Source: Zootoca vivipara (Eukaryota). Taken from it: a stretch of DNA of 64,000 bases. Positions 1-62,745 of this stretch are shown piece after piece. The position numbers and the translations under genes were made by a program. The notes beneath the pieces were generated by a model. It had not been told where the DNA came from. It did no database searches and worked only from the letters and a program-made list of their open reading frames with translations. The DNA lies in assembly GCF_963506605.1 (NCBI RefSeq), contig NC_083277.1, forward strand, positions 20,708,001-20,772,000, written 5' to 3'. The first letter of the stretch is position 1. Each line of letters starts with the position of its first letter.

Positions 1-313
1 TTCCGGAGATATGAGAATTTCGCTGGACTAGAACCGTTGTCTAAGCTTGCTACACGAAGTGCAGAACAAAGGTGTACATCACTAGGACTGGGGAACCTTT
101 GGCTCTCCAGAGGTTGCTGAACTACAATTCCCATTATCCCTGGCCATTAGCCATGCTTGCTGGCGGGTCAAAAGTTTCCCACCCCTAGTGGAGGTTGCAA
201 GGCAATGGATAGCATCCATTCTTTGCATCACTAAAACAGTAAGTGAGGAAGCAGCTAAGTTACCTATTTTATTGGCAGTTTGATGTCTCCAGTCTAATGT
301 GCATTTGTTCCAG

Positions 314-630
314 CTGTGAAAATAAGGATTTCCAGGAAGAACAAGACCTCCACCATTGCTGACTTTGACCTTGACGCCAGGCTGGAAGTTCTGAAGCATG
401 GCCCCCTTCTGAAGACTGAAACCCACTCCAAACTCCAGCAGTGGCTGAACTTAGATGCTACCTGTGTACACAACATTATGAGAGGGACAAACACAGGCGT
501 CTATCTGATCTGCGGTGAGGTGCAGAATGACAAAGTTGTGGTGGTGAACAAGGCCTATGCATGGCACAAGAGGAACCGAAATCTACAGGCTGCTGTGCGG
601 CGATGGAAACATTACAAGTGCCGGGTCTGA
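314..630 (+). CDS. szl: Terminal coding exon of an sFRP-family gene (NTR/netrin-like domain), most likely sizzled; upstream exons lie left of the window
   Basis: Acceptor tttgttccAG (AG 312-313), phase 1, then (A)VKIRISRK...LQQWLNLDATCVHNIMRGTNTGVYLICGEVQNDKVVVVNKAYAWHKRNRNLQAAVRRWKHYKCRV* (TGA 628-630). This matches the recalled Sizzled C-terminal pattern (LQQWL..N..C...VY.I.G....KV.VN....W.K....L..A.RRW.H.KC). Confidence 0.8.
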
Positions 631-2530
631 ACTGCTTATACGCTCTGGTATGAAATGATAGAAAGATGCTCTCTTGTTTGTAGCTGAAAGGTCTTCTTCA
701 GCATATCTGGAGCAGAGTTTAAAAAGTAATAGATACAGTCTATAGTAAAAACCATACACCACTGCACCAAGAAAGTAGTTTTCAAACTGCTCTGAGAAGC
801 CCTGGAGTTTCCTACAAGCCTAATTGGGGTTTCTCAACGAGAAAATCAGTAATGGTTCACCAGCTTCTTTGAAAGACAGTTTGTCCACCATTGTAGATAT
901 TCTGCAGTGCTGGACTCTTTATCTTACTGCATGGGAAGCACCAGGAGACAAACCACAAGTACTTATAGTAATAGGCTGATTGCTTGACTTCGTCTCCTGC
1001 AAACCTACTTTCCTGGCCACTTCTTTCACCCATACCATGCAGGAATGGCTCACCTGGTGGAACCGGAGCTTCAACAATAACCTTGAGGCAGCAGTGTTGC
1101 AATGGCTTCCTGGGAGAGCTGAAGTGGCAGCTAGGCTGGGGCTGAATGGGTAGCCTGTGGGTGCACGATTGGCTTTAGCAGTCTGCCTGCACAGCCCTGA
1201 CCTTGCTGCTGCCTCACCTCCTCCCACTACTGGTAAGTGGCAATGACTAGGCTGAGCTGCCACAGGCTCTGTCAAGCTGACCTGTCAAGCTGCTCCTGAT
1301 TCCCCTTCATCTTCTACCCATCAGGCTTTTTGCCATCACCCATCCTTCCCTCACTCCAGGACATTTTATTTTGCAGTTTTACACAAAATATGTAAAAAAA
1401 AACACAAAATCCACACACTGCCTGAGGGACACCCTTGTGATCTGCAAGCTATGAATACTATGTATTTAAAAACTAATGACAGCAGTGTGTGTTCCTTAAA
1501 AATGCTGGTTGCATTAAAAGGATTTAACAAGAAAGATGTTTAGTTTCTCATTAAGACTTTCCTTTGAAAAAACACAGTTAACAACATGGGAATCTTTTAT
1601 GCAGATTTTTTTATATAAAAAAACAAAACAAAACCTGTGGCATATAACTGTTCTTGCTAGAAGCTCCTGCTTCAAGTTAAATGTGTGTTTGTGGAGTGCC
1701 TGTCATATTGCTGCTGGTTGTTTCTGAACCTCAGGCAATGCTGAGGTTCAGAAACAACAAATTCCTCAGGCAATGCTGACAACAGCAGTGCTTCCAAGAG
1801 GAGGATGAAAAATGGGCATGTGTGTGTGTGTGTGTACGTACACACACACATGTATTTCTTGCTGGCTACAGAAATTATTGTTGCCTATCAAGCTCAATTG
1901 CAATTTGTAAACCCTCAATTAATACTATTCCCTGATGTAACCAGTTCAATCCAGTAAAGATTGATCTATAGCTGGTGGAAATGGATTAGTCAGGCACCAA
2001 TGTAAGAGGAGTTGAGCATGTGTCACATCACCATTTTCTATCATTGTACCTACCCCCATCCACCCACTTTCTCTTAAGGAGCAAAGAAGGGAGGGGCAAT
2101 GAGAACTGTGGAGTTTCTATGAAATTTCAGCTGTCAACACTTTGTGCATTCCTACATGAGAAAGAGGCAAAATCTGCTCTTCTAAACAGCGGTTAAAGGC
2201 AAAGGACTCTTGTCTTCTTTTGCACCTGGTTACTCTAGAGAGAGCAGGTGAAAGACCATAGAACATAGTAAAAAAAAAATCAAAATCAGTTGGGGTTAAG
2301 AAATGGATCCTGGGTCTGAAAAATTAACAGACTACTGCTGTAAAGGATGTTCACATGTGCTCGGGAGCCACAGTAATAATTACTGTCATGAATGGGACAG
2401 AGTTTCTGTGCCCAAAGGCAACAAAAGATGAGGCAATAAGAAGCCGCCAAACTTAGATATATGGTACATCTCATTCCCTCTTCTACCAATAGGTCATCTG
2501 GATATATCTCCAGTAGCCTCTTTTTCTTAC

Positions 2531-2612
2531 CAAAAAGGAGTGGTTTCAAGCTGAGAGTTTTCATGAGATGGATTTTGTTAGGAATCAGCTCCACCTTCTG
2601 TTTATGGCCCAC
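2531..2612 (-). CDS. P4HTM: P4HTM exon 2 (82 bp): VGHKQKVELIPNKIHLMKTLSLKPLLF
   Basis: Acceptor ttttcaAG|GTG, donor G|GTAAG; peptide recognisable as P4HTM. Confidence 0.92.
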
Positions 2613-3231
2613 CTTGAAAAGAAAGTAAAATAAATTAATTTTGACTGCTATACACCAAATATAGTTAGCTCCAGTATATGGTATTATTGGAGGCCTTTGG
2701 TCAATATCTTTACATACACAACGACCCTGCTAAATCATGACATGGCAAATTCTGAAATACAAAATATCACAAAGCTCATCTACATGGTTCAAAACTATAT
2801 GACATCAGCTGCTAGCAAATACAGGATATACTAGTTCTAGGCTCAGTGTGGAAGCAGCACTCACCACAGAAGGTTTAGGGTTCTTCTGCATTATCACTCC
2901 TCTGCACAATAAATGCACAGTTTACTCATCTGCCGTCACAGTGTGTGCACGAGTGTGTGCACGAGAGAATAACACATCTTGCTAGCATCTAACTGAAAAT
3001 TTCACAAGGTGCTACAAGAGAATGGTTACTACTGACTCACCTGGATAGTTTTGACTACCATTTTAAAAAGTATTCTTTTAACTTTAACTTTTTAAATTAC
3101 TGAAATTCTTTTGCTGTGCCAATTGAATATAGGAGCTTTATTTCTTTAAAGAGTGGATATTGGCAGCAAAATTAACCTCCATTGCAACAGCATAGGGAAT
3201 GTGTCCATCCATAATTATTGTGTTGATTCTA

Positions 3232-3263
<32 letters not shown>
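3232..3263. repeat. (GCT)~10 microsatellite in P4HTM intron 1
   Basis: Direct read. Confidence 0.95.
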
Positions 3264-4539
3264 AGCTTTTTGTTTTAAAAGGTAGGCAATCCCAATCTGG
3301 ACCAAGGAACAGACAAAGTTGCAGCCCAGTGAATTTACAATAAAGTCATATTGATGTTGCTCATATTAGATCCTACTGTATCACTCTAGAATTTAGTATA
3401 CTGCACTAAATCTATTACCGTAGGCCAGCCCAACATCGAAACAAACCACATCAATCAGGCCAGTCTATAGTACATCACATTATGCAAAGCATAAATCAAT
3501 CCTAGCCGTGACAAATAGACAAACTCAACCCACAGTTTAAGTACTTCTCCCAATAATGCATGACTGCTCAAATTATTTAAAGGCTTGAATTATTTAAAGG
3601 CAAAGGCAATAAAAAGTTTTTTAAAAAATAAAATAACTTCATTATAAAATAAAATACTTGGGGAGGCAGCTGCCCCCCCACTATGCCCATTATCCCTAAA
3701 TGACTTGTGTGATGATGTCCCTTGAGACTGGAGGGGTGTGTGACTGAGGACAGAGGAGAAAACTTTCTTTCCCCTGACGCAGTTTAACAGCTGCATAAAA
3801 ATCAGAAACTCAGCAAGTGCAAAAAACTTTTCATATCACTGCATCAGCGTGCTGGGGAAAGCATCACCTTGGAGGGGCTAGACGGCACTTAGCCCATTAT
3901 GCTTCTTTTAAAGATCCACGAGGGCTTGCCACTTATCAGAACTAGCAGCCGCCGAAGGAGGAGACGGCCCCTGTCGGGGCTGCAGCAGCAGTGGACAGGG
4001 ATATTATATAAAATAATGTATATTTCCAGACCCCCCCTCCCTTTGTAGGGTAACATTTTCTACAGGAACACGGTTGACTTGACACCCCTCGGCCGATTTC
4101 CTGACGAGGGGGGGGGGAAATCCCCCTGCAGCCCCATTACAAACAAACACAACGACGACAACAACAACCGGAATTCCCTAAGGGGCAACTCTAGAAAAAA
4201 AGCCAAGGAAGCAAAAATATTGTAATAATCACCATGAGACGAGGATGTTGCTGCATACCTCCAAATACGGATATACCGTATGGCAGCTGAAAGCTGGGAG
4301 GGCAAGAAATAATTTGGGGGTAAGCGCAGGAAGTCGTCCCCGCTGCCCCCGAAACTGCTGGGGGTTTTTTTGCACAGAAACCTTGGGAGGAGGGAGGTTT
4401 TTTTTTCTTTTCTTTTGGAAGGGTCGAGGAAAGGGAAAAACTCGCCCCTACCCTTGAAACTTTAAAAACAGCAGCAAAACGGAGACCTGCCCTCTTGAAT
4501 GACCCCAAGAGAACAGCAGTGCTTGTTTCCATCCTCGCG

Positions 4540-5110
4540 CAGAAGATGGTTTTGGGACGCTACTTGCCTTGATGCCCTCGAGGCGAGGCAGGCTGTGAGG
4601 GCGAGAGCCTCCCGGGGAGCGGGAGGAGAAGGGCGGCGCGGGCGGGTCCTGTGCGGGGTCCGGGGGTCTCTCCTTGCCCGGCTCCGTCTCCCCGTCGTCG
4701 GAGCTGATGTGCACGAAGAGCAGCAAGCCCAGCACGTTGAGCACGTAGAGGTGCGCGAACACCATCAGCACCACGAAGTAGGGTCGGGAGCACACGGCCC
4801 TCCGCCCAAAGGAAGGCCCCGGCAGCGGGCGGGGGTCTTCGTCCGGCGTCGCCGTCGCCGCCGCAGCCACAGCTGCCCCCGCCGCAGCAGCCATGGCTAG
4901 GCCCGGCCCGCTCCGGCCTTGGAGCTGGGCACCGTTACCACGGCAACCACCCCGCGAATAGCGGCGGCGGCCGGGCAGGGGCTTCTCCGAGAGGGCTCCC
5001 CTCACGTCATCACGCACGAAGGAAGAGCGCACGGCCGGGCCCGTTAGTTTGGCCGGGGGGGGGGGGAGGAGAGTGGAGGGAAGGCGACTGTACGGCGCTG
5101 GCCAGGACGA
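4540..5110 (-). promoter_or_regulatory. CpG island / P4HTM promoter with an X-box-like site (4934-4947) and a CRE-like TGACGTGA (~5002-5009)
   Basis: High GC and CpG density over exon 1; motifs read directly from the sequence. Confidence 0.75.
4568..4894 (-). CDS. P4HTM: P4HTM (transmembrane prolyl 4-hydroxylase) coding exon 1
   Basis: ATG at 4894 (GCCATGG); Ala-rich N-terminus; signal-anchor CSRPYFVVLMVFAHLYVLNVLGLLLFVHI; ends LPRLEGIK with donor AAG|GCAAGT. Confidence 0.92.
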
Positions 5111-6358
5111 AGTCCTAGAGGGTGCTGGCCTGTACTGTAGGGATTTTTTTAAAAAGTGTTTTGGCTCTGCCCACGGTAGAAGCCGGTCATTTTAGGTCCT
5201 GGCAACTTTGCCTCTCCTCCCCTAGCAGTGTGATGGGAAGCCATTTTGAGAAAGGGCATCGGCTCCCCCCCTTGCGGATGAATATGAAACTGCAGCCATT
5301 TTTGATAAGGGCAGAACGTCCACCGCTTTCCTGACGTACCGTAGTTGTTTTGTTGACAGAGCAGTAGCTGGTGTGAAGGCATATTTTAAGCGAAGTGAAT
5401 TAGCTAGTTCTACTAATACTTTTTTAAATTAAAAAAACACCTGACATAAAGCCCGAGTTTTTTTCTTTCTTTTTTTGGAACTCAAATGTTCCTAGACATG
5501 TACAGAGTGCCTTTTTCAGCGGCAACGTAATGAATCGTCCTCGTAGGTCAAGAACCATCTAGGTAAAAGCTCCTCCTGCCTTTCAATTATATGTATAAAA
5601 TAGAATATAGAACAGCTGCTCTCAATTTCAGTAATGAAAGCCAGTTGAACAGCATGTAAAGCCCATATTGAGTATGTAAAACCAACATTCGATATCCTCC
5701 TCACACCTTATGCAACCAGTGCCTGAGAGCTGCTGGTAGCTTTTGTATAATCCTCTACCTTTGAGATTTACTTCAGGATTATGAAGTAGATCCAAGAGCA
5801 CAAATTCGGGTTTTGTTTCAAAGAGGAAGGGCAACACCTTTGCCCATATTAATTCCTCAAAAACTTGTACATCTTGAAGGAGATACAACTTCACAGGCTT
5901 TTTTTTAAAAAAAAACAAATGAGAACATGACAGCTGGTAAAGAACTTCCCTCCCCATCCTCTTTTCCTTTTGTACCAGTGTCTTTTTTACATAGCACATT
6001 CCCTGCCTTCAGACTTGCTATTTTGACATGTAAGCCACTCTACAAACCTTTTTAAGTTAGCAAGCAGGCTATAAATGCTTTGCATAAATAAACGAGGAAG
6101 TTGAACACAAAGCAATGTTTTGGAGAGAACAAAAAACTGGATTGGGGGACTGACTTGTTTTGAGTCTGAAAGGCTGAACCTATTTTAATAGGTTGCTGGA
6201 AATCGGTGGTACTGTTCAAGCAGCTCCCAGTTTATATTAAAACTCTCAACATTCCGCTTCCTCATCCCCTTTCTCACTGTATAATGGGAAATGGTGTATC
6301 AGTAAGGGAGGGAGGAAAAAAAAAGACACTACGCACATTTAAAATTAGAAATTCACAA

Positions 6359-6364
6359 TTTATT
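6359..6364 (-). terminator. ARIH2: Probable distal ARIH2 polyadenylation signal
   Basis: AATAAA on the minus strand followed by a GT/T-rich tract (TGTGCGTAGTGTCTTTTTTTTT). Confidence 0.5.
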
Positions 6365-9300
6365 TCAAATAAACAATTTCAGGAAAGGGAAACTGCAAGG
6401 GCTCTTTCCTTTGCCCCTTCCCCTCCTAATGCCGGAAAAGTGTTGGCAGTTTCTTGAGATTGCTTCCCCCCCACCCATACCTCAGTGAGGGACAGAGCAA
6501 AGGCAGCCATGATAATGTAGCACTCTGCATAATAATAAAAAAGCTCCCATAGCAGAAGCTACTACCTGAAAACTTGGAACAGTCCAGACTTGAGTGAGCA
6601 CACATAAGAACTTTCCTAGAAAAAGCTATTGAGAAATCTGATTTTTTGAAACAAAAACAAGTTTTGAGTGAATTGAGACAGTGCAATAATAAGAGAACTC
6701 TCCAGTTCCTGAAGAAGTCACATGGCACACAGCTGACATAAAAATTTAGGTTGTCAACAGAAAACTGGTCGCTGCTGCAGAGGAAGGAGTGCTATAGAGA
6801 GAGCAAGTATAAAACTTGATTAGAGCAGGGATGGGGAACTTTTGGCCATCCAGAAGCTATTGGACTCCCAGCTCCCATCAGTCTCAGCCAATGGTCAGGG
6901 ATGGTGTGAGCAGCAACATCTGCAAGGCCAAAGGTTTTCCCCATCTCTGGATTAGAGGAACTCTCTCCTATTGAACAGCCTCTTTTGGTGTATATGTATG
7001 CAAGCTTTTGAGTTATAGAGACTTCTATTTGCCAGGAGATTTGGTGTAACTTGAGAGCTCGGTTTGTTCAGTATCAGAAGTTGTGCGAAGACAGTTTTGG
7101 ATCTCTTTCATATAGAAAACTGTGGCAGGTAATACTAAATGTAAGCGAAAAACCAAAACAAAGTCAGCATTGAAGGTGAATCAAGCCAAGTATTAAAAAG
7201 TAAGAGTGATAGGATGACAACAGGTGCCAGGCTGGCTGAGAGTCAAGCCTTACAGAAAGCGACAAAAAGCTCCCAGTTTAGGATGTTAGCCTGGTATGAG
7301 GAAAATGTCCTTACACTCTGAGCTCAGGTGCCACTAATTCTTAATTGCTGTCTTGCTATTCCTACCAGCTTGTTGCAGAATGGCAAGGATTTTCTGAGGC
7401 AACAAACTGTTTTGAGTTCTGCTTTAGAACCATTAGCTTCTTTTTCCAGAGTGAAGAGGATGCTTTCCTATAGCACAGCCTAATCTTATCAGTGGCAAAA
7501 CCTCTCTGGCAAAGTCTGAACATAATGGAATTCTAATACAGGGAGCCTGTATCGGGGAAGAATAAAAATGCTGATCTATCAACTGTCTGGGACTTAAAAG
7601 TGTTAGTTTATACATATATGAATGCTACCTGCTCTAAACTGGGAGGCAGCTATTAATACGCGATGCAATACTGGCTTAATATAGCACATCTAAAAGCACT
7701 GTAAGGGGTTGGTGCCAGCCATGTGGAGGCTACAAGTTTTGAAAACATGACTTTTTAACATTGAAAGTTGTCAATGTGCTACCATCAAGTTGACCAGCTA
7801 CAACTGGATGTCAGATGTAAGTGCAAAGCCACACATCACTCCCTTTTGCACTGGACAGTTCTGAGCTACAGAAAACATGTGTGACTTAACTTCTCTTATT
7901 CAATGAGACCCACCGCTCAGTCTGAATGCAAAGTTTAAAGATAAAAAGATCCTCATGTCCTTCAGAGGCTGAACACTGTGTTAAGCTAGCAGGAGATCAG
8001 GTCAGCATTTAACAGAAATAAGTCGTAAGCCATACCTTCCCACAGCTCTTCTGGTCACAAGGCTTATCTTTATCCAACTGCAGCTGGGTTAATGAAATAA
8101 TCCCATGCTAGCACTTTATGCACCACATCTCATCAAAACAATAACAAAATGAATGCTAACATACTGTGCAATTAAAATCACACACACGCTGAACTTCTTG
8201 CACTTTGCTAAAAGATTTTCGTCTGTTTCTATATATCAAGGCCCAGATTGGACTTCATGCAGAGAAATGGAAAACATCTACAGCCAAGAGAACACAATCA
8301 CATGATCTCCGCTTACAGCAGATAAGACATGGGTTAAAAGGAGCAAGCCTGATGAGGTCATCGTGCCGCATCAGCTACAAGAGACCTATAAAATGGCCAA
8401 TGGAAGAGAAAAGGTGAACAAAGCAGGAAATGGGGGGGGGGGCGGAGAGAGAAGAGTTTCTCTTCACGGTACTTTTTCTTAGCCTAGTACACACACCCCC
8501 TTTTCAAGGCCCTGCTTGCGTAATCTGTGGTTAACTGGCAATGGGGTAGGAAGAGAGTAATATTAAAAAAGGTACTAGGGTCATTTACTAAGGAAGCAAG
8601 CAGGTAGTTGGTATAATCATTTTCCTTGGAGTGCTTGAGGTAGTATTAGCAGCACGTGAAGGGCGAAAGGGTGGCATGGCAGATTGCTCCCACCCCCCAA
8701 GAGCTAGGACAGGTCAACATCCAGAAATGCTAATAAAATAGCTCCCGCTAAAAGGCCAGAAAGGTAGGTGCATAAAGCACAGAATAATGATCCTAGCTTG
8801 CCAGTCCTCCCTTGTCCAAACCAAAAAGATCATCAATCAATGTACAAACAAAAGTTCAGTGCAACATATTTTTTTTTTAAACAGGTAGCAAGATGTTATT
8901 TCAAATCGAATCAGAGTAACTTCAGGAGAGAGCCAGCTGTTCAGTCTTCTTTTCTAGGTGAATAATCAACTTAAGCAGGCATGTTGACCATGCACTATAC
9001 ATACCCTACACTGCACGGTTTTTTTACTGTTTCGAAACTGGCCTCCCACATGAATGCGAGGAAAATTTGACCTTTTACACATTCAAGTGTTCGGAGTCCC
9101 CTACTAATAATAAGCCACCCGTGAACATAGGTTTGTATCTGACCAAGTCCTACTGAAATTAATGGGACTAAGTCAGGCCCATAAATTTGAATGGTCTACT
9201 TCAAGCAGGACTAGTGGTGGAAAGAACTCCTTAATATTCATTCAGCTTCATTCTCGCCAATTTTGCTGGCTGTTTTTCAGCCAGCCATAGTTTTTAGGAC

Positions 9301-12295: not shown

Positions 12296-12652
12296 AAGAC
12301 TTTCGTAAGATGTGCTAGTAATTTAAGGTTTCCTATAGGACTGTGGCAGCGGTGCTTGGATGGAAGCGTGGAGTGGCAGCTACTGGGGCTACCACTGCCA
12401 CCAACCTGGAGCTCCCCTGACCTTGCTGCCGCCTTTCCCCACCCCCATTCTGAAGTGCCACAGCATCTCCACCAGCACAGAAAGCCCTGCCCCCTTTATA
12501 AGTCTCTGTTGTTTTTACAAGTTGGTAAAATTGGGAAGATTAACAAACAAAGCTTAAATAGCACATTGACTCATCTTTTACTTGCCGAATGCAGTTTGTT
12601 TTGTATCCCCTTCCTTACGAAACAAAAGCAAAGCAGCAAACAGAAGCAGCTA

Positions 12653-14342
12653 CCGTGTTTCCCCTTTTTTAAGACGTAGTCATAAAGTAAGCCATGGCAG
12701 GATTTTTAAGCTTTTGCAAAATATAAGACATACCCCGAAAATAAGACATACACCCATGACATGTGGAGCGAGACCGCCGAGCGCCCCAGCCAGCCAGCGG
12801 GACCTAGCACGCCAGCTATGGCAGCAGCAGGAGGGGGAGGCCTGCATGCTGTCCCGCCGCCCGGAACTGGCTGCTGGAGCGGCAGCGCCCAGCAACTCAG
12901 AGCACCGGGCGGAGTGCCGGAGCCAGCGGCCTCACCTCCACCCGGCCAAGGAGGCCTGCCATCCCACGGCCCTGAACCGGCTGCTGGAGTGCACAGAGCA
13001 CCCAGCAGCTCGGAGGATCCAGCAGTGCCGAGCGGAGCGCCGGAGCCAGCGGACTCGCCTCCACCCGGCCGAGGAAGCCTGCCATCCCGCCACCCTGAAC
13101 CGGCTGCTGGAGCGCGTGGAGCGCCCAGCAGCTCGGAGAACCCAGCAGCGCCGGGCAGAGCGCCGGAGCCAACGGCCTCGCCTCCGCCCAGCCGAGGACG
13201 CCCGCCATCCCGCCGCCCTGAACCGGCTGCTGGAGCGCGCGGAGCGCTCAGCAGCTCGGAGAACCCAGCAGCGCCGGAGCCAACAGCCTCGCCTCCACCC
13301 AGCCGAGGACGCCCGCCATCTCGCCGCCCTGAACCGGCTGCTGGAGCGCGCGGAGCGCCCAGCAGCTCAGAGAACCCAGCAGCGCCGGGCGGAGCGCCGG
13401 AGCCAACGGCCTCGCCTCCGCCCAGCCGAGGACGCCTGCCATCCCGCCGCCCAGAGCAAAACAAGCGCATGCTTTCCCTTGGCTTGTAAGGCTCTTGCTG
13501 CAGACAAGTGTGCTTCACGGCACTCCATCCTCTGTTGTTTTCCCCAGCAGAAAGTGCCATGCGGGCACTCATCCATACCACAGCAGAGTGTGTCTGCTTC
13601 AAAGGATGAGTTTGCCCCTGACGAGAGCCAAGTGTGGCTTGCTAGCCCAGTATTTCTGTGGTCCCTGCTCAGGCATTCCTGTATTGAGATACCCAGTTCT
13701 GGTGACAACTGGGGTGTCTTTTAAAACCTCCAATTTACAGAGCTACCTGACCTTCTGGAGGCAGCTGCATTCTGATCTGGTAGATTCTAAACTTGCTCTT
13801 TTTCAGTCAGTGGGATACTTCCAGACTCTGCTTCTGCTCTATCTGCCCTGGCTCTGTCTTCCAGCCCTGTCTCGAGGGCTATTGTTTTTCAAAACAAAAG
13901 TCTGCAATCCCATACAGTATCCCCGTAAGTGAACATATCTAACAATTGCTCATAAAATTATGCTGATGCCCTTCTCCTTCCTCAGAACAGGTCTCAAGCC
14001 AAATCATTCTGAAGTTGAAATTTAAGACACAAGCTAGCCTAATGGCTGGATTTCCAAAAGATAAAAACACAATTCTGACAACCCTTTGAATAAGCAGCAT
14101 TGCCATTTGGGCCAGGGCATGGGAATCTGGTATCTGTGGACAATGGTGAGTGGAACTGGCGGCTGCTGCAGCGCCGAGCACTCAGAGAGCCCAGCAGTGC
14201 CCCGAGCCAGCGGCCCGGGCGAGGAGACCGTAAAGTAAAAACCATAATAAAAAAATAAGACATCCCACTGAAAATAAGCCACCCAGTGTTTTTTTGAGAG
14301 AAAAAAGTTATAAGACGGTGTCTTAAAAAAGGGGAAACATGG
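12653..14342. mobile_element. Non-autonomous Tc1/mariner (pogo/Tc2-like) DNA element
   Basis: 23-bp terminal inverted repeats (TIRs) CC(G/A)TGTTTCCCCTTTTTTAAGAC, TA on both flanks, subterminal AAAATAAGAC repeats, no transposase. Confidence 0.85.
12860..13452. repeat. GC-rich minisatellite with a 123-bp unit (~4.5 copies, one unit shortened to 111 bp)
   Basis: GCCATC anchor at 12958, 13081, 13204, 13315 and 13438. Confidence 0.9.
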
Positions 14343-15732: not shown

Positions 15733-16578
15733 CTGTGAAAATGGTGTAAGGTGTAAGACGACGATGAGGAATAAAGGGGAGGGAAAGACAGGCTGGGAAA
15801 CAGCAGGCCACAGCAACGCATTGGAAAAGACTGCACGGAAGCACCTTAGAATGCAAAGTCCCTCCTTTGGAAAAGGCAAGATGTACCAGAAAGCAAACAT
15901 ATCGTTGCTGCTTTCTAACAAAATATTACCACATTATCTTTCGGTAAGTGACTCCAGAAGAGCTAAGACAATTCCATTCACATTAGCATTCCCACTTCAA
16001 ATCTGCAGCGATATCAAACTGGAGCAAGGTTTTGCCACGTTTTAAATAGAAAAGCTTCCTGAAGCACTGTCTGAAGAAAGCAAAGCTTTTCATATATGCC
16101 CTTTTTAAATTTGTGATGTGGAACACACACACATATATGCAAACATCGTATTTCCATAATATATTTTGGAGGGGACAATCTAGGTGTTTACACAATGCAG
16201 ATACTTGATTAAATAGGGATTAAGAATGACAAGCCAAGAGGCAGCTTTAAGCAGTTTTGGTGCAGAGTTATGCAGATTTACAGAAGGCAAACTGTACACT
16301 TGTAGGAAGATTCCACTGCAGAGCACCAGAAAATTTTAAGCAACCTATTGCTCTTGGCTTCAAGGAAAGAGCACTATCATTACAGGACAGGCAGAGATTA
16401 TCACTGAAAAGGAGCTTGCTTCTGGAAGAATAACCTTGAGGAATGATCTGGATCTGTGGCTACAGAACGTTTTGTTCAATGAGCGCTTTCTCACAATCAT
16501 CATTAGCATTGCCCTTTGCATAAGGTGAGGTTCATGAAAAAGGCTACAGTTAGCTCCAGCCAAGGAGATGCCTCCTAC

Positions 16579-16730
16579 CCTTTCAAAATAGAACAGGTAC
16601 TTCTTAAGGGCCTCCCTGGCCTGTGCTTGCTGACTCTGGTTTACAATATCAGGATTCTCTTTGTACCGACTGCATTCGTAGTACTCGCTGCCATGAGTCT
16701 TCCAATCCCCTAGACACATCCAGCAGAAGT
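16579..16730 (-). CDS. ARIH2: ARIH2 coding exon 10: [14 protein letters not shown]...YLFYFER
   Basis: AG/GT boundaries, 152 bp. Confidence 0.97.
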
Positions 16731-16956
16731 CTGCAGAGGACAGGAGAGTATACGTTATTGCACAGGGCAATAAATAAAGCAATGCTTCTTTGAGGAACGA
16801 GATCAACACCTCTCCCTCTAAGTGGCAAAGATGCTACCATAGAGCTTGCACATTAACTAGAAGAGCTCTATGGGACCAGTGGGATAGTATCCAAATCAGA
16901 GGGATAAACATTTGCCCCAACTTTAACACACAAAAAACCTGGTGCTGTCTGCTTAC

Positions 16957-19248: not shown

Positions 19249-20560
19249 ACGTAGCCAAAGAATGCTCCAACTACTGCACAATTGCGCTCATTTTACACGC
19301 TAGCAAGGTTATGCTTAAAATTCTACAAGGCAGGCTTAAGCAGTATGTGGACCGAGAACTCCCAGAAGTGCAAGCTGGATTTCGAAGGGGCAGAGGAACC
19401 AGAGACCAAATAGCAAACATGCGCTGGATTATGGAGAAAGCTAGAGAGTTCCAGAAAAACATCTACTTCTGCTTCATTGACTACACAAAAGCATTTGACT
19501 GTGTTGACCACAGCAAATGATGGAAAGTTCTTAAAGAAATGGGAGTGCCTGATCATCTCATCTGTCTCCTGAGAAATCTCTATGTGGGACAAGAAGCTAC
19601 AGTTAGAACTGGATATGGAATAAATGATTAGTTCAAAATTGGGAAAGGAGTACAACAAGGCTGTATATTGTCTCCTTGCTTATTTAACTTATATGCAGAA
19701 TTCATCATTAGAAAGGCTGGACTGGATGAATCCCAAGCCGGAATGAAGATTGCCGGAAGAAATATCAACAACCTCAGATATGCAGATGATACAACCTTGA
19801 TGGCAGAAAGTGAGGAGGAATTAAAGAACCTTTTAATGAGGGTGAAAGAGGAGAGCGCAAAATATGGTCTGAAGCTCAACATAAAAAAAACTAAGATCAT
19901 GGCTACTGGTCCCATCACCTCCTGGCAAATAGAAGGGGAAGAAATGGAGGCAGTGAGAGATTTTACTTCCTTGGGTTCCATGATCACTGCAGATGGTGAC
20001 AGCAGTCACAAAATTAAAAGATGCCTGCTTCTTAGGAGAAAAGCAATGACAAACCTAGACAGCATCTTAAAAAGCAGAGACATCACCTTGCCAACAAAGG
20101 TCCGTATAGTTAAAGCTATGGTTTTCCCAGTAGTGATGTATGGAAGTGAGAGCCGGACCATAAAGAAGGCTTATCGCCGAAGAATTGATGCTTTTGAATT
20201 ATGGTGCTGGAGGAGACTCTTGAGAGTCCCATGGACTGCTAGAAGATCAAACCTATCCATCCTGAAGGAAATCAGCCCTGAGTGCTCACTGGAAGGACAG
20301 ATCCTGAAGCTGAGGCTCTAATACTTTGGCCACCTCATGAGAAGAGAAGACTCCCTGGAAAAGACCCTGATGTTGGGAAAGATGGAGGGCACAAGGAGAA
20401 GGGGACGACAGAGGACGAGATGGTTGGATAGTGTTCTCGAAGCCACCAACATGAGTCTGACCAAACTGCGGGAGGCAGTGCAAGACAGGAGTGCCTGGCG
20501 TGCTCTGGTCCATGTGGTCACGAAGAGTCAGACACGACTGAGCGACTAAACAACAACAAC
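19249..20560 (+). mobile_element. BovB (RTE clade) LINE, 5'-truncated, with a degenerate reverse transcriptase (RT)
   Basis: QAGFRRGRGTRDQI, FIDYTKAFDCVDH, NLRYADDTTL; in-frame stops; (CAA)n tail; TSD ACAGTC(A/G)TAC. Confidence 0.95.
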
Positions 20561-33670: not shown

Positions 33671-33907
33671 CGTTAAGTACTAGGAAGTCAGTAAAGGAGA
33701 GTGCCTATGGGTATTAAAGTACTTGTGCTCTGTGAAAGGGGGCACACACACAAAGTGAAACTGGAAACACAGCCACCCCAGATCCACAGCAGTTTTGGTC
33801 ATTTTTTCACTTACAGCTCTGATGGCAGACCAAGCGATTCAAGTTTTCCTTGTCCGTTTTGCAGCCCTTAAAGGTGCACCTTCATCGCATGCCACAGTGC
33901 TGCTCAC

Positions 33908-34156
33908 CTTTAATGCAGAGGCCAAGCTGACCATGTGCTCATTCAGGGTACTCTCCGATTCCTTGTAAGTCAGGCAGCTAAATTGATATTCCTCAGGGTC
34001 AAAGGCATCTGCTCCCTGTTGCTCCACGTCATTTGCCACCCCCACATAGTAATCCTCAATGTCCCCAGGCTCTTCGTCCTCTTCCTCCTCATCACAGTTT
34101 GGATCATAGTCCTCTTCATTGCTGTCAGAGCCCTGGCTGTTCATGTCCACAGACAT
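33908..34156 (-). CDS. ARIH2: ARIH2 (ariadne RBR E3 ubiquitin ligase 2) first coding exon; the exon including 5'UTR probably starts at 34253
   Basis: [21 protein letters not shown]...LASALK then GTGAGC. The 14 exons sum to 1473 nt = 490 aa + stop. Confidence 0.97.
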
Positions 34157-35207
34157 CTTAGTGCTCAGCCAAACTGCGGAGCAGGAGCGTAGAGTCCGTT
34201 TCTTTTTCAACAACTCTTATTGCTCTGTTGACTTCATTCGACTTCTCTGCCTCCTAAATTTGGGGCAGGGGCGGGGGGGGGGGAGAGGAAAATATATGAG
34301 TAAGTTTAATGCCTGCAAATAACCTGACAAGAACAACAGAATTCATATGGGGGGCAGGGCGGGAATTCAACAAAGTTAAAATAGTAAGTAGCGATGTTCA
34401 TACGCAATGAAGGCAGACCACTTTTTTTTGGTAAGACACCGAATGCTTATGCCCAGGTCGCTTCAGGAGTCATGTTCAGATTCCTGCTCCATGCCACACT
34501 CCCCCTATTCAGTCTACCTCACAGGGCTCCTCCAGCTGCTGAAAATCTGAGCAGGAAAAGAACTGCAACAGACTTGGTCCTCTGAAAAGTGCCACAGAAA
34601 TATATAAGGGGGCGCATGGTCTCCCAGTTCTCCATCTTCTGTCTTAATTGCACATGTTTGTATTTGTTTCAGTCTGTCCCTTGTTTTCTAACAGAGAGAA
34701 AGTCAGCTTGCAAAAATCAAAAACCGTACACTACACCATACAGATGCAAATAGCCCAATTTAAAATAATCAAAACATTTTTTAAAAAATCTTAACGGCAG
34801 ACATTCAAATTGCCCACCTAGAAGTGTTAAGGGTTTCCAACTCTCATGAAATTATTTCACAAAGGACAAAAAGTCCTTCTAAAGGTCTTCTAAACCTAAC
34901 TCCATTTCTGATCCTTCTAAAGGAGTGGAGTGGGCTGACCAGAGGCACAGTGGGGGCCATACATCTGATGGTAGCAGCACCCTCCGCTGTCTCTCATCGG
35001 ATGAGCTGCAAAAATGGGAAGAGAACACAACGGAGAAAGCATTCCTTCAGGCCATGTACGCATAACTTTATGGATCAAAGTTAACACTCTGAGTAGTGCT
35101 TCAAAAGTAAGTGGGGCAGCTCACGGACGATCAGTAAAATATGATCTAGCCACTGCATGCTGGAGTAGTCGAAGTTCCTCAACAGCCTTCAAAGACGGCC
35201 CTGTGTC

Positions 35208-52733: not shown

Positions 52734-53380
52734 CCACAAACTTGACATGAGTCAGCAGTGTGATGGTGTGATGCAGCAGCTAAAAAAGCCAATGCAATTC
52801 TGGGCTGCATCAATAGGAGTATAGCATCTAGATCAAGGGAAGTAATAGTACCACTGTATTCTGCTCTGGTCAGACCTCACCTGGAGTACTGTGTCCAGTT
52901 CTGGGCACCACAGTTCAAGAAGGATACTGACAAGCTGGAACGTGTCCAGAAGAGGGCAACCAAAATGGTCAAAGGCCTGGAAACAATGCCTTATGAGGAA
53001 CGGCTTAGGGAGCTGGGTATGTTTAGCCTGGAGAAGAGAAGGTTAAGGGGTGATATGATAGCCATGTTCAAATATATAAAAGGATGTCATATAGAGGAGG
53101 GAGAAAGGTTGTTTTCTGCTGCTCCAGAGAAGCGGACACGGAGCAATGGATTCAAACTACAAGAAAGAAGATTCCACCTAAACATTAGGAAGAACTTCCT
53201 GACAGTAAGAGCTGTTCGGCAGTGGAATTTGCTACCAAGGAGTGTGGTGGAGTCTCCTCCTTTGGAGGTCTTTAAGCAGAGGCTTGACAGGCATATGTCA
53301 AGAATGCTTTGATGGTGTTTCCTGCTTGGCAGGGGGTTGGACTGGATGGCCCTTTTGGTCTCTTCCAACTCTATGATTCT
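52734..53380 (+). mobile_element. CR1 LINE 3' fragment
   Basis: [32 protein letters not shown]...[10 protein letters not shown]; 3' end CTATGATTCT; GAA repeats on both flanks. Confidence 0.95.
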
Positions 53381-62240: not shown

Positions 62241-62745
62241 GGATTAGTTACAACTAATCCGGAATGCGGCAGCTAGACTGGTGACTGGGAGCGGCCGCCA
62301 GAACCACATAACACCGGTCTTGAAAGATCTACATTGGCTCCCAGTAGGTTTCCGAGCACAATTCAAAGTGTTGGTGCTGACCTTTAAAGCCCTAAATGGC
62401 CTTGGTCCAGTATACCTGAAGGAGCATCTCCACCCCCATCGTTCAGCCCGGACACTAAGGTCCAGTGCCGAGAGCCTTCTGGCGGTTCCCTCGTTGCGAG
62501 AAGCCAAGTTGCAGGGAACCAGGCAGAGGGCCTTCTCGGTGGTGGCGCCTATCCTGTGGAACGTCCTCCCATCAGATGTCAAAGAGAAAAACAGCTACCA
62601 GATTTTTAGAAGACATCTGAAGGCAGCCCTATTTAGGGAGGCTTTTAATGTTTAATAGATTATTTTATGCCATTTTTCTGTTGTAAGCCGCCCAGAGTGG
62701 CTGGGGAAACCCAGCCAGATGGGCAGGGTATAAATAATAAATTAT
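62241..62745 (+). mobile_element. L2-clade LINE 3' fragment
   Basis: HITPVLKDLHWLPV...FKVLVLTFKALNGLGP...FRRHLKAALFREAF; AT-rich tail. Confidence 0.88.

What the first reader, a model, noticed from the sequence alone, without database searches (positions are those of the whole stretch)
314..630. Sizzled-like sFRP gene nested antisense inside P4HTM intron 2
Seen: an intact exon with a proper acceptor and stop on the + strand, 1.9 kb beyond the P4HTM exon 2 donor. P4HTM has more exons that must lie left of the window, so this exon is inside P4HTM on the opposite strand. Known: the peptide fits the NTR domain of sFRPs, closest to Sizzled, the Tolloid/BMP1 inhibitor of the Chordin-BMP dorsoventral system in fish, frogs and birds that is reported lost in mammals. 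The phase-1 intron before 'AVKI' fits the sFRP last-exon boundary. Inference: this squamate keeps an intact szl hosted in P4HTM, and the mammalian P4HTM intron may be where it was lost. The arrangement could create transcriptional interference between an embryonic patterning gene and an oxygen-dependent hydroxylase.
Basis: partly seen in the sequence, partly recalled or inferred. Interest (0 to 1): 0.8.

Follow-up and report, generated by a model that had tools for sequence, protein, structure and literature searches.

The report
Lizard Crescent gene exon inside P4HTM
The exon is real and intact, but it is the last exon of the lizard's Crescent (Frzb2) gene, not Sizzled; this is a known, already annotated embryonic Wnt/Tolloid inhibitor gene that lies backwards inside an intron of P4HTM, as it also does in a fish.

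Summary
Window 314-630 (+) is an intact, phase-1 terminal coding exon with an AG acceptor at 312-313 and a TGA at 628-630. It lies 1.9 kb from the donor of P4HTM exon 2 (2612-2531, minus strand).

The naming is wrong. The 105-residue peptide is 99% identical to the RefSeq 'sFRP5-like' proteins of Lacerta agilis and Podarcis muralis. It is 68% identical to Xenopus tropicalis Frzb2, and only 28-37% identical to any Sizzled. That includes the lacertids' own Sizzled (30%), which lies on a different chromosome-sized record.

A maximum-likelihood tree splits a Crescent/Frzb2 clade from a Sizzled clade with 100/100 support. The exon sits among lacertid Crescent sequences. Database names in the same 90% clusters include 'crescent' (alligator, camel).

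The antisense position in P4HTM intron 2 is supported, but P4HTM exon 3 was not seen. A fish contig from a metagenome carries the four coding exons found of a Crescent-type gene, convergent with P4HTM exons 2 and 1 in the same order.

Loss of Crescent in mammals is patchy: marsupials, camelids and a mole keep intact copies.

No RNA evidence could be obtained. The conserved nesting is a small curiosity.

The parts
1..311 (+). 3' end of the last intron of the Crescent-type gene (also part of P4HTM intron 2); it holds a SINE-like repeat around 85-175
   Evidence: Sequence read. No conserved coding piece apart from the exon itself in the fish-lizard comparison.
312..313 (+). splice acceptor AG, preceded by a pyrimidine-rich tract
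   Evidence: The boundary coincides with the exon boundary implied by lacertid RefSeq proteins (...DF|AVKI...) and by the fish contig L001.
314..630 (+). terminal coding exon of Crescent (Frzb2; RefSeq name 'sFRP5-like'); phase 1, 104 full codons plus stop TGA at 628-630. It encodes the C-terminal two thirds of the NTR domain, including the equivalents of Sizzled Cys231 and Cys281.
631..1540 (+). putative 3' UTR, up to shortly after the first poly(A) signal ATTAAA at 1513 (inferred, no RNA evidence)
   Evidence: between the stop and P4HTM exon 2 the only poly(A) signal on the + strand is ATTAAA at 1513. The next one (AATAAA, 2629) lies beyond P4HTM exon 2.
2529..2530 (-). GT donor of P4HTM intron 2
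   Evidence: minus strand reads ...CTT TTT G|GTAAG. Phase 1, fitting Phe-Glu as in human P4HTM (alignment ends at Phe64).
2531..2612 (-). P4HTM exon 2 (82 nt), the same length as in the fish contig L001 (2100-2019)
   Evidence: 6TP5, E 1.2e-4, the only hit; fish exon, same hit; 65% identity between fish and lizard.
4568..4894 (-). P4HTM exon 1 coding part (ATG at 4894-4892, transmembrane segment, ends ...LEGIK), followed by a GC donor at 4567-4566
   Evidence: 44% identity over 86 residues to the equivalent ORF next to P4HTM exon 2 in L001 (E 8e-12).

Best explanation
Window 314-630 (+) is the last coding exon of the lacertid orthologue of Crescent (Frzb2). Crescent is a secreted Frizzled-related protein made of an N-terminal Frizzled-type cysteine-rich domain (CRD) and a C-terminal netrin-like (NTR) domain. 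The exon encodes the C-terminal part of the NTR domain, including two cysteines that close the two NTR disulphides. Their partners are encoded by upstream exons left of the window. By homology, the protein is secreted in the early embryo. Its CRD is expected to bind Wnt ligands and to act as a competitive inhibitor of Tolloid/BMP1 proteases, which protects Chordin. The strongly basic NTR tail (20 Lys+Arg in 105 residues) probably mediates matrix or heparan-sulphate binding. The gene lies on the strand opposite to P4HTM, with its 3' end pointing at P4HTM exon 2, inside P4HTM intron 2. This arrangement is shared with a teleost and is therefore old. Shown here: the exon, its orthology, and its position relative to P4HTM exons 1-2. 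Inferred: expression, biochemical activity, the 3' UTR end, and that P4HTM exon 3 lies beyond the gene's first exon in this genome.
For: Identity: 103/104 residues match Lacerta agilis XP_032997244.1 and Podarcis muralis XP_028575458.1; 68% to X. tropicalis Frzb2; 28-37% to Sizzled of frog, fish, birds and reptiles; 30% to P. muralis Sizzled. Tree: the Crescent and Sizzled clades are split at 100/100, each follows the species tree from sharks to amniotes, and the window exon sits inside the lacertids at 100/96. Names in the same 90% clusters include 'crescent' (Alligator mississippiensis), 'crescent precursor' (Camelus ferus) and 'frizzled related protein 2 precursor' (X. tropicalis). Structure-defining residues: all 16 structural cysteines of Sizzled (including the interdomain pair 115-156, which PMC9437010 says only Sizzled and Crescent share) and Asp92 are kept in the lacertid full-length proteins. 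The two that fall in this exon are present in the window. Position: P4HTM exon 2 and exon 1 are on the minus strand to the right, with ARIH2 further upstream on the same strand. The fish contig L001 has the four coding exons found of the Crescent-type gene (+), then P4HTM exon 2 and exon 1 (-), with no other conserved coding piece between. [quoted passage not shown]
Against: Pfam's NTR model does not hit the fragment, nor the full-length relatives; the NTR assignment rests on homology to the Sizzled crystal structure. True SFRP1/2/5 sequences were not in the tree, so it is unrooted.
Confidence: 0.92

Rival explanations
1. It is the last exon of Sizzled (szl).
For: The best, and only significant, solved-structure hit is Xenopus Sizzled. 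The same exon architecture and C-terminal ...W+H+KC motif are present.
Against: The PDB holds no Crescent, so that ranking is uninformative. Identity to any Sizzled is 28-37%, against 68% to Frzb2. The tree excludes it at 100/100. Lacertids have a distinct Sizzled on another chromosome-sized record, 30% identical to the peptide.
Confidence: 0.01
2. It is a lineage-specific SFRP5 (or SFRP1/2) paralogue, as the RefSeq names 'sFRP5-like' suggest.
For: RefSeq and UniRef names in the clade read sFRP5-like, sFRP5, sFRP2 or sFRP1.
Against: The clade runs from sharks to amniotes and includes X. tropicalis Frzb2 and proteins named crescent. The names are automatic and inconsistent within a single cluster. 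The exhaustive search with the exon gave only 29 representatives. Every one whose name or sequence was looked up (13 of the 29) is Crescent- or Sizzled-type, though some carry automatic sFRP5/sFRP2 names. The interdomain cysteine pair is reported only for Sizzled and Crescent (PMC9437010) and is present here.
Confidence: 0.03
3. It is a decaying or unexpressed relic exon (pseudogene) that happens to keep an open frame.
For: No expression data could be obtained. The upstream exons were not seen in this genome.
Against: The frame, acceptor and stop are intact. Only 1 residue in 104 differs from each of two other lacertid genera, and every invariant residue of the family is kept. Full-length intact models exist in sister species.
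Confidence: 0.04

Closest known systems
Crescent / Frzb2 (chick Crescent, Xenopus frzb2)
   Same: Orthologous clade (100/100). 68% identity to X. tropicalis Frzb2 over the exon. The same C-terminal exon boundary. The NTR cysteines are conserved, and in lacertid full-length proteins so are the CRD, the interdomain disulphide pair and the Asp equivalent to Sizzled Asp92.
   Different: Nothing of kind; it is the lizard orthologue. Lacertids have one extra residue (a run of four Val) and a non-conserved extra Cys (...YLICGEV...) in the exon. Expression and activity are untested in any squamate, as far as the paper searches showed.
Sizzled (Szl, Frzb3), crystal structures 5XGP and 7EL5
   Same: Same two-domain fold and disulphide pattern, same exon end at the C-terminal Cys; both are reported as Tolloid/BMP1 inhibitors.
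   Different: An ancient paralogue: 28-37% identity in this exon, and a separate clade present alongside Crescent from sharks to birds. Lacertids carry it on a different chromosome-sized record.
SFRP1/2/5 subgroup
   Same: CRD plus NTR architecture. The literature places Sizzled and Crescent closest to this subgroup (PMC9437010).
   Different: Among the 13 of the 29 hits to the exon whose name or sequence was looked up, all are Crescent- or Sizzled-type. SFRP1/2/5 lack the interdomain disulphide (PMC9437010). Not compared directly here.
Opposite-strand genes nested in introns of host genes
   Same: The exon, and in the fish contig all four coding exons found (from the start of the CRD), lie between host exons 2 and 3 on the opposite strand.
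   Different: The host's exon 3 was not observed on either contig, so the nesting is inferred from the fact that P4HTM must continue. No evidence of regulatory coupling.

Membership tests
Crescent / Frzb2 | Groups with named Crescent/Frzb2 proteins to the exclusion of Sizzled in a phylogeny | tested here: met
   100/100 split; the window exon sits inside the lacertid branch (100/96). The clade holds X. tropicalis Frzb2, and an Alligator sinensis protein whose 90% cluster includes 'crescent' of A. mississippiensis.
Crescent / Frzb2 | NTR-domain cysteines equivalent to Sizzled Cys231 and Cys281, encoded by the last exon | tested here: met
   Cys at peptide positions 51 and 103, invariant in the last-exon alignment and aligned to Sizzled C231/C281.
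Crescent / Frzb2 | Fz-type CRD with ten cysteines, the interdomain disulphide pair (Sizzled 115-156) and the Asp92 equivalent | not testable with these tools
   These exons lie left of the window. They are present and intact in the 99%-identical Lacerta and Podarcis proteins, but this genome's copy was not seen.
Crescent / Frzb2 | Early embryonic (anterior endoderm/organizer) expression; Wnt binding; Tolloid inhibition | not testable with these tools
Function is taken from the literature on Xenopus.
Sizzled | Groups with Xenopus/zebrafish Sizzled in a phylogeny; highest identity to Sizzled | tested here: not met
   28-37% identity, in the other clade. A separate lacertid Sizzled exists.
secreted Frizzled-related proteins (general) | C-terminal netrin-like (NTR) domain | tested here: met
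   End-to-end alignment to residues 160-259 of the Sizzled crystal chain 5XGP_A, which fall in the NTR domain as described for that structure. Pfam's NTR model gives no hit on the fragment or on full-length relatives, so this rests on homology to the structure rather than on Pfam.
SFRP5 (RefSeq name of the lacertid orthologues) | Orthology to mammalian SFRP5 | tested here: inconclusive
   No bona fide SFRP5 sequence was available for the tree. Indirect evidence argues against it: clade composition and names, the Sizzled/Crescent-specific disulphide, and no SFRP1/2/5-type protein among the 13 exon hits that were looked up.
Intronic nested gene (host P4HTM) | Host exons on both sides of the guest gene | tested here: inconclusive
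   Host exons 1-2 lie to the right. No P4HTM-like piece lies between 1 and 2530. Exon 3 must lie left of the window but was not seen. The same picture holds for the four coding exons found on fish contig L001.

The most novel reading that the evidence does not exclude
The placement of Crescent antisense within P4HTM intron 2 is ancestral to bony vertebrates: the same order and orientation occur in a teleost and a lizard. Crescent was not lost once at the base of mammals. It was lost repeatedly within eutherians, since marsupials, camelids and a mole keep copies with every structural residue intact. P4HTM intron 2 of species that lack the gene would then be the defined place to date each loss.
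Probability: 0.45. Interest if true: 0.35.

Novelty: already known. Interest (0 to 1): 0.18.

Why it matters
It mainly corrects a label. The lizard exon is Crescent, a gene known since 1997 and already modelled in RefSeq for sister species, under the misleading name 'sFRP5-like'. Two small points may be useful. First, automatic names in both the Crescent and Sizzled clades (sFRP5-like, sFRP2-like, sFRP1) hide the orthology and invite exactly this kind of confusion. Second, the Crescent-in-P4HTM arrangement is conserved between a fish and a lizard. Together with intact Crescent genes in marsupials and a few eutherians, this gives a fixed genomic address for studying how and when this embryonic patterning gene was lost in other mammals. 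No paper found in the held library's full text links Crescent or Sizzled to P4HTM: one search was empty, and the single paper holding both 'crescent' and 'P4HTM', a goat-breed genomics study, was not opened.

Tried and rejected
1. Pfam scan of the exon peptide found no NTR hit, only a sub-threshold OTU1_UBXL match at E 0.13. I treat that match as chance.

No letters of 3607-3642 were sent to any search tool afterwards. The local BLAST left them out. The local regex script read the whole window file but sent nothing out.

The genomic context of the lacertid, chicken, frog and camel genes could therefore not be fetched.

4. The search of earlier findings returned only this same finding.

5. Paper searches for sizzled+P4HTM, crescent+P4HTM and frzb2+crescent gave nothing relevant.

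6. A PDB search with P4HTM exon 1 gave only chance hits, because the crystallised construct lacks this part. Exon 1 was instead supported by comparison with the fish contig.

8. The Sizzled identity, the SFRP5 paralogue and the pseudogene readings were considered and rejected. See the rival explanations.

Full report
**Observation**

A pyrimidine-rich tract ends in an AG at 312-313. From 314 an open frame runs to a TGA at 628-630. Two bases complete an Ala codon begun in the previous exon, so the intron is phase 1. The 105-residue peptide (AVKIRISRKNK ... RRWKHYKCRV) is not a chance ORF. An exhaustive phmmer search of 1.84 billion representatives gave 29 hits. The best was E 1.6e-53, to a 148-residue squamate fragment. 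A series of E 1e-25 to 1e-17 hits went to secreted Frizzled-related proteins, each aligned up to its last residues. Against the PDB the only significant hits are the two Xenopus Sizzled structures (5XGP, 7EL5; E 4e-18), over their NTR domain to the C-terminus.

**Which sFRP it is**

The PDB hit misleads, because no Crescent structure exists. The representatives fall into two groups:

- Proteins about 50% identical to the peptide.
- Fish proteins named 'sizzled', at 34-36% identity.

A word-index search with a full-length member of the first group found a family spanning sharks, coelacanth, teleosts, frogs, turtles, crocodilians, birds, tuatara, squamates, marsupials and a few eutherians. It includes 'frizzled related protein 2' (Frzb2) of Xenopus tropicalis. 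The 90%-identity clusters of these proteins also carry the names 'crescent' (Alligator mississippiensis KYO25057.1) and 'crescent precursor' (Camelus ferus EQB77091.1). That Xenopus frzb2 is Crescent is my own knowledge; the cluster names support it independently.

Pairwise identities over the exon:

| Compared with | Identity |
|---|---|
| Lacerta agilis XP_032997244.1 and Podarcis muralis XP_028575458.1 | 103/104 |
| Other squamates | 81-87% |
| Turtle | 79% |
| X. tropicalis Frzb2 | 68% |
| Every Sizzled tested (frog, fish, coelacanth, tuatara, alligator, turtle, birds, gecko) | 28-37% |

A maximum-likelihood tree of 24 Crescent-type proteins, 19 Sizzled-type proteins and the window exon separates the two groups at 100/100 (LG+C20+F+G4, ultrafast bootstrap/SH-aLRT). 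Each group recapitulates the vertebrate species tree. The exon sits with Lacerta and Podarcis at 100/96. The tree has no SFRP1/2/5 outgroup and is unrooted.

Lacertids also have a true Sizzled. A search seeded with a gecko Sizzled found orthologues in Zootoca, Podarcis, Lacerta, Anolis, Pogona, Tiliqua, Elgaria and Rhineura. In P. muralis, P. raffonei and L. agilis this gene sits on records of 78.1, 79.3 and 70.7 Mb. The Crescent-type gene sits on records of 126.8, 127.3 and 120.8 Mb. The window peptide is 30% identical to P. muralis Sizzled.

**Integrity**

PMC9437010 lists the eight disulphides of Sizzled and says the interdomain bridge (115-156) is shared only with Crescent. In an alignment with Xenopus Sizzled, all 16 of these cysteines and Asp92 are conserved in the lacertid, Anolis, alligator, bird, marsupial, camelid and mole Crescent-type proteins (the N-terminally short Talpa model lacks the first of them). 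Asp92 is the residue reported as essential for BMP1 inhibition. The two cysteines that fall in the last exon (equivalents of C231 and C281) are present in the window at peptide positions 51 and 103. They are invariant in the last-exon alignment. The exon is strongly basic, with 20 Lys+Arg against 8 Asp+Glu. Pfam recognises the Fz domain of the lacertid protein (E 5e-27). It does not recognise an NTR domain in any of these proteins.

**Surroundings and nesting**

- **P4HTM exon 2** lies on the minus strand at 2612-2531 (82 nt). It has an AG acceptor and a G|GTAAG donor at 2530-2529. Its only PDB hit is human transmembrane prolyl 4-hydroxylase 6TP5, residues 38-64 (E 1.2e-4).
- **P4HTM exon 1** has its CDS at 4894-4568. 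It carries the start codon and the transmembrane segment and ends in LEGIK, followed by a GC donor.
- **ARIH2** lies further upstream on the same strand (E 3e-31 to ARIH2 structures). From my own knowledge, this is the order found at human 3p21.31.

No P4HTM-like piece lies between 1 and 2530 on the minus strand. The rest of P4HTM must therefore lie left of the window. That puts the Crescent exon inside P4HTM intron 2, on the opposite strand, 1,900 nt from the exon 2 donor.

A scan of metagenome contigs with a last-exon profile did find one vertebrate contig, L001 (MDSQ01002691.1, 7,340 nt). Its peptide is nearly identical to percomorph fish proteins. On L001:

- The four coding exons found of the Crescent-type gene lie on the + strand. 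Two are Fz-domain exons (Pfam E 2e-14 and 7e-10), followed by a linker exon and the last exon at 1291-1608.
- P4HTM exon 2 follows on the minus strand at 2100-2019. It is again 82 nt and hits 6TP5 at E 7e-5.
- The P4HTM exon 1 ORF follows at 2883-2407. It is 44% identical to the lizard exon 1.

A six-frame comparison of L001 with the window finds only these three conserved pieces (plus weak antisense or chance matches), in the same order and orientation. So the convergent arrangement is shared by a teleost and a lizard. In the fish, all four coding exons found (from the start of the CRD) lie downstream of P4HTM exon 2 with no P4HTM exon among them. P4HTM exon 3 was not observed on either contig. 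The nesting is well supported but not directly seen.

**How it most likely works**

This section is inference from the family. The gene should encode a secreted two-domain protein. [quoted passage not shown] 2011, cited in PMC8753366 and PMC9437010). sFRPs bind Wnts mainly through the CRD (PMC9437010). The only poly(A) signal between the stop and P4HTM exon 2 is ATTAAA at 1513. This suggests a 3' UTR of about 0.9 kb that stops about 1 kb short of P4HTM exon 2. Transcriptional interference with P4HTM is possible in principle for any convergent nested pair, but nothing here speaks for it.

**Mammals**

Kuraku and Kuratani (2011, PMC3296468) list both Sizzled and Crescent as lacking mammalian orthologues and as absent from the eutherian genomes then available. 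The current databases hold Crescent-clade proteins from marsupials (Monodelphis, Vombatus, Gracilinanus, Petaurus), camelids (Camelus, Vicugna) and a mole (Talpa), with all structural residues intact. There is also a degenerate-looking model from a cat. In the tree, camel and the marsupials form a mammalian branch (99/96), with a long camel branch. Loss in mammals is therefore patchy. I did not examine any human sequence.

**Limits**

- There is no RNA evidence.

**Verdict**

The exon is real, intact and strongly conserved. It is the terminal exon of the lizard Crescent (Frzb2) orthologue, already modelled in RefSeq for sister genera as 'sFRP5-like'. It is not Sizzled. It lies antisense in P4HTM intron 2, an arrangement shared with a fish. 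This is an ordinary gene correctly spotted but misnamed. The conserved nesting and the patchy mammalian retention are minor points worth a note.

Noticed in passing
proteins P0132, P0134, P0155, P0289, P0287, P0008 (not in the window): Crescent-clade genes with every structural cysteine and the Asp92 equivalent intact exist in marsupials, camelids and a mole. A cat model looks degenerate. The 2011 literature lists Crescent as lost in eutherians, so the loss is patchy.
   Followed up: partly
window 4566-4567 (minus strand): P4HTM intron 1 appears to use a GC donor (AAG|GCAAGT) after ...LEGIK. The fish contig has a normal GT at the equivalent place.
   Followed up: no
window 12894-13452: GC-rich tandem array with a 123-nt period, 4.7 copies, 85% matches, between P4HTM and ARIH2. 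It produces long spurious ORFs on both strands (12582-13724).
   Followed up: partly
window 16363-16809 (-) and 33839-34213 (-): ARIH2 exons. The first matches ARIH2 structures at E 3e-31; the second was judged ARIH2-like by eye only. ARIH2 lies upstream of P4HTM on the same strand.
   Followed up: partly
window 19668-20321 (+), 52965-53312 (+), 62281-62655 (+): ORFs that look like retrotransposon remnants (a reverse-transcriptase fragment with a YADD motif, and LINE 3'-end ORF tails). Judged by eye only.
   Followed up: no
window 85-175 and 3232-3262: A SINE-like repeat inside the Crescent intron, and a (CTG)n microsatellite in P4HTM intron 1.
   Followed up: no
L001 (MDSQ01002691.1) 1-7340: A record in the metagenome collection is vertebrate (percomorph-fish-like) DNA, probably host contamination. 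It carries the four coding exons found of a compact Crescent-type gene and the 5' end of P4HTM only 410 nt apart.
   Followed up: partly
database names: Automatic names hide orthology. Crescent orthologues are called sFRP5-like, sFRP5, sFRP2 or sFRP1. Tetrapod Sizzled orthologues are called sFRP2-like or sFRP5-like.
   Followed up: partly
Podarcis proteins P0281/P0151 and P0284/P0283: Lacertid Crescent has two annotated isoforms that differ by one residue (..RRTVPQ.. versus ..RRMPQ..). The site corresponds to an exon boundary in the fish gene, so they probably use alternative neighbouring splice sites. This does not involve the window's exon.
   Followed up: partly
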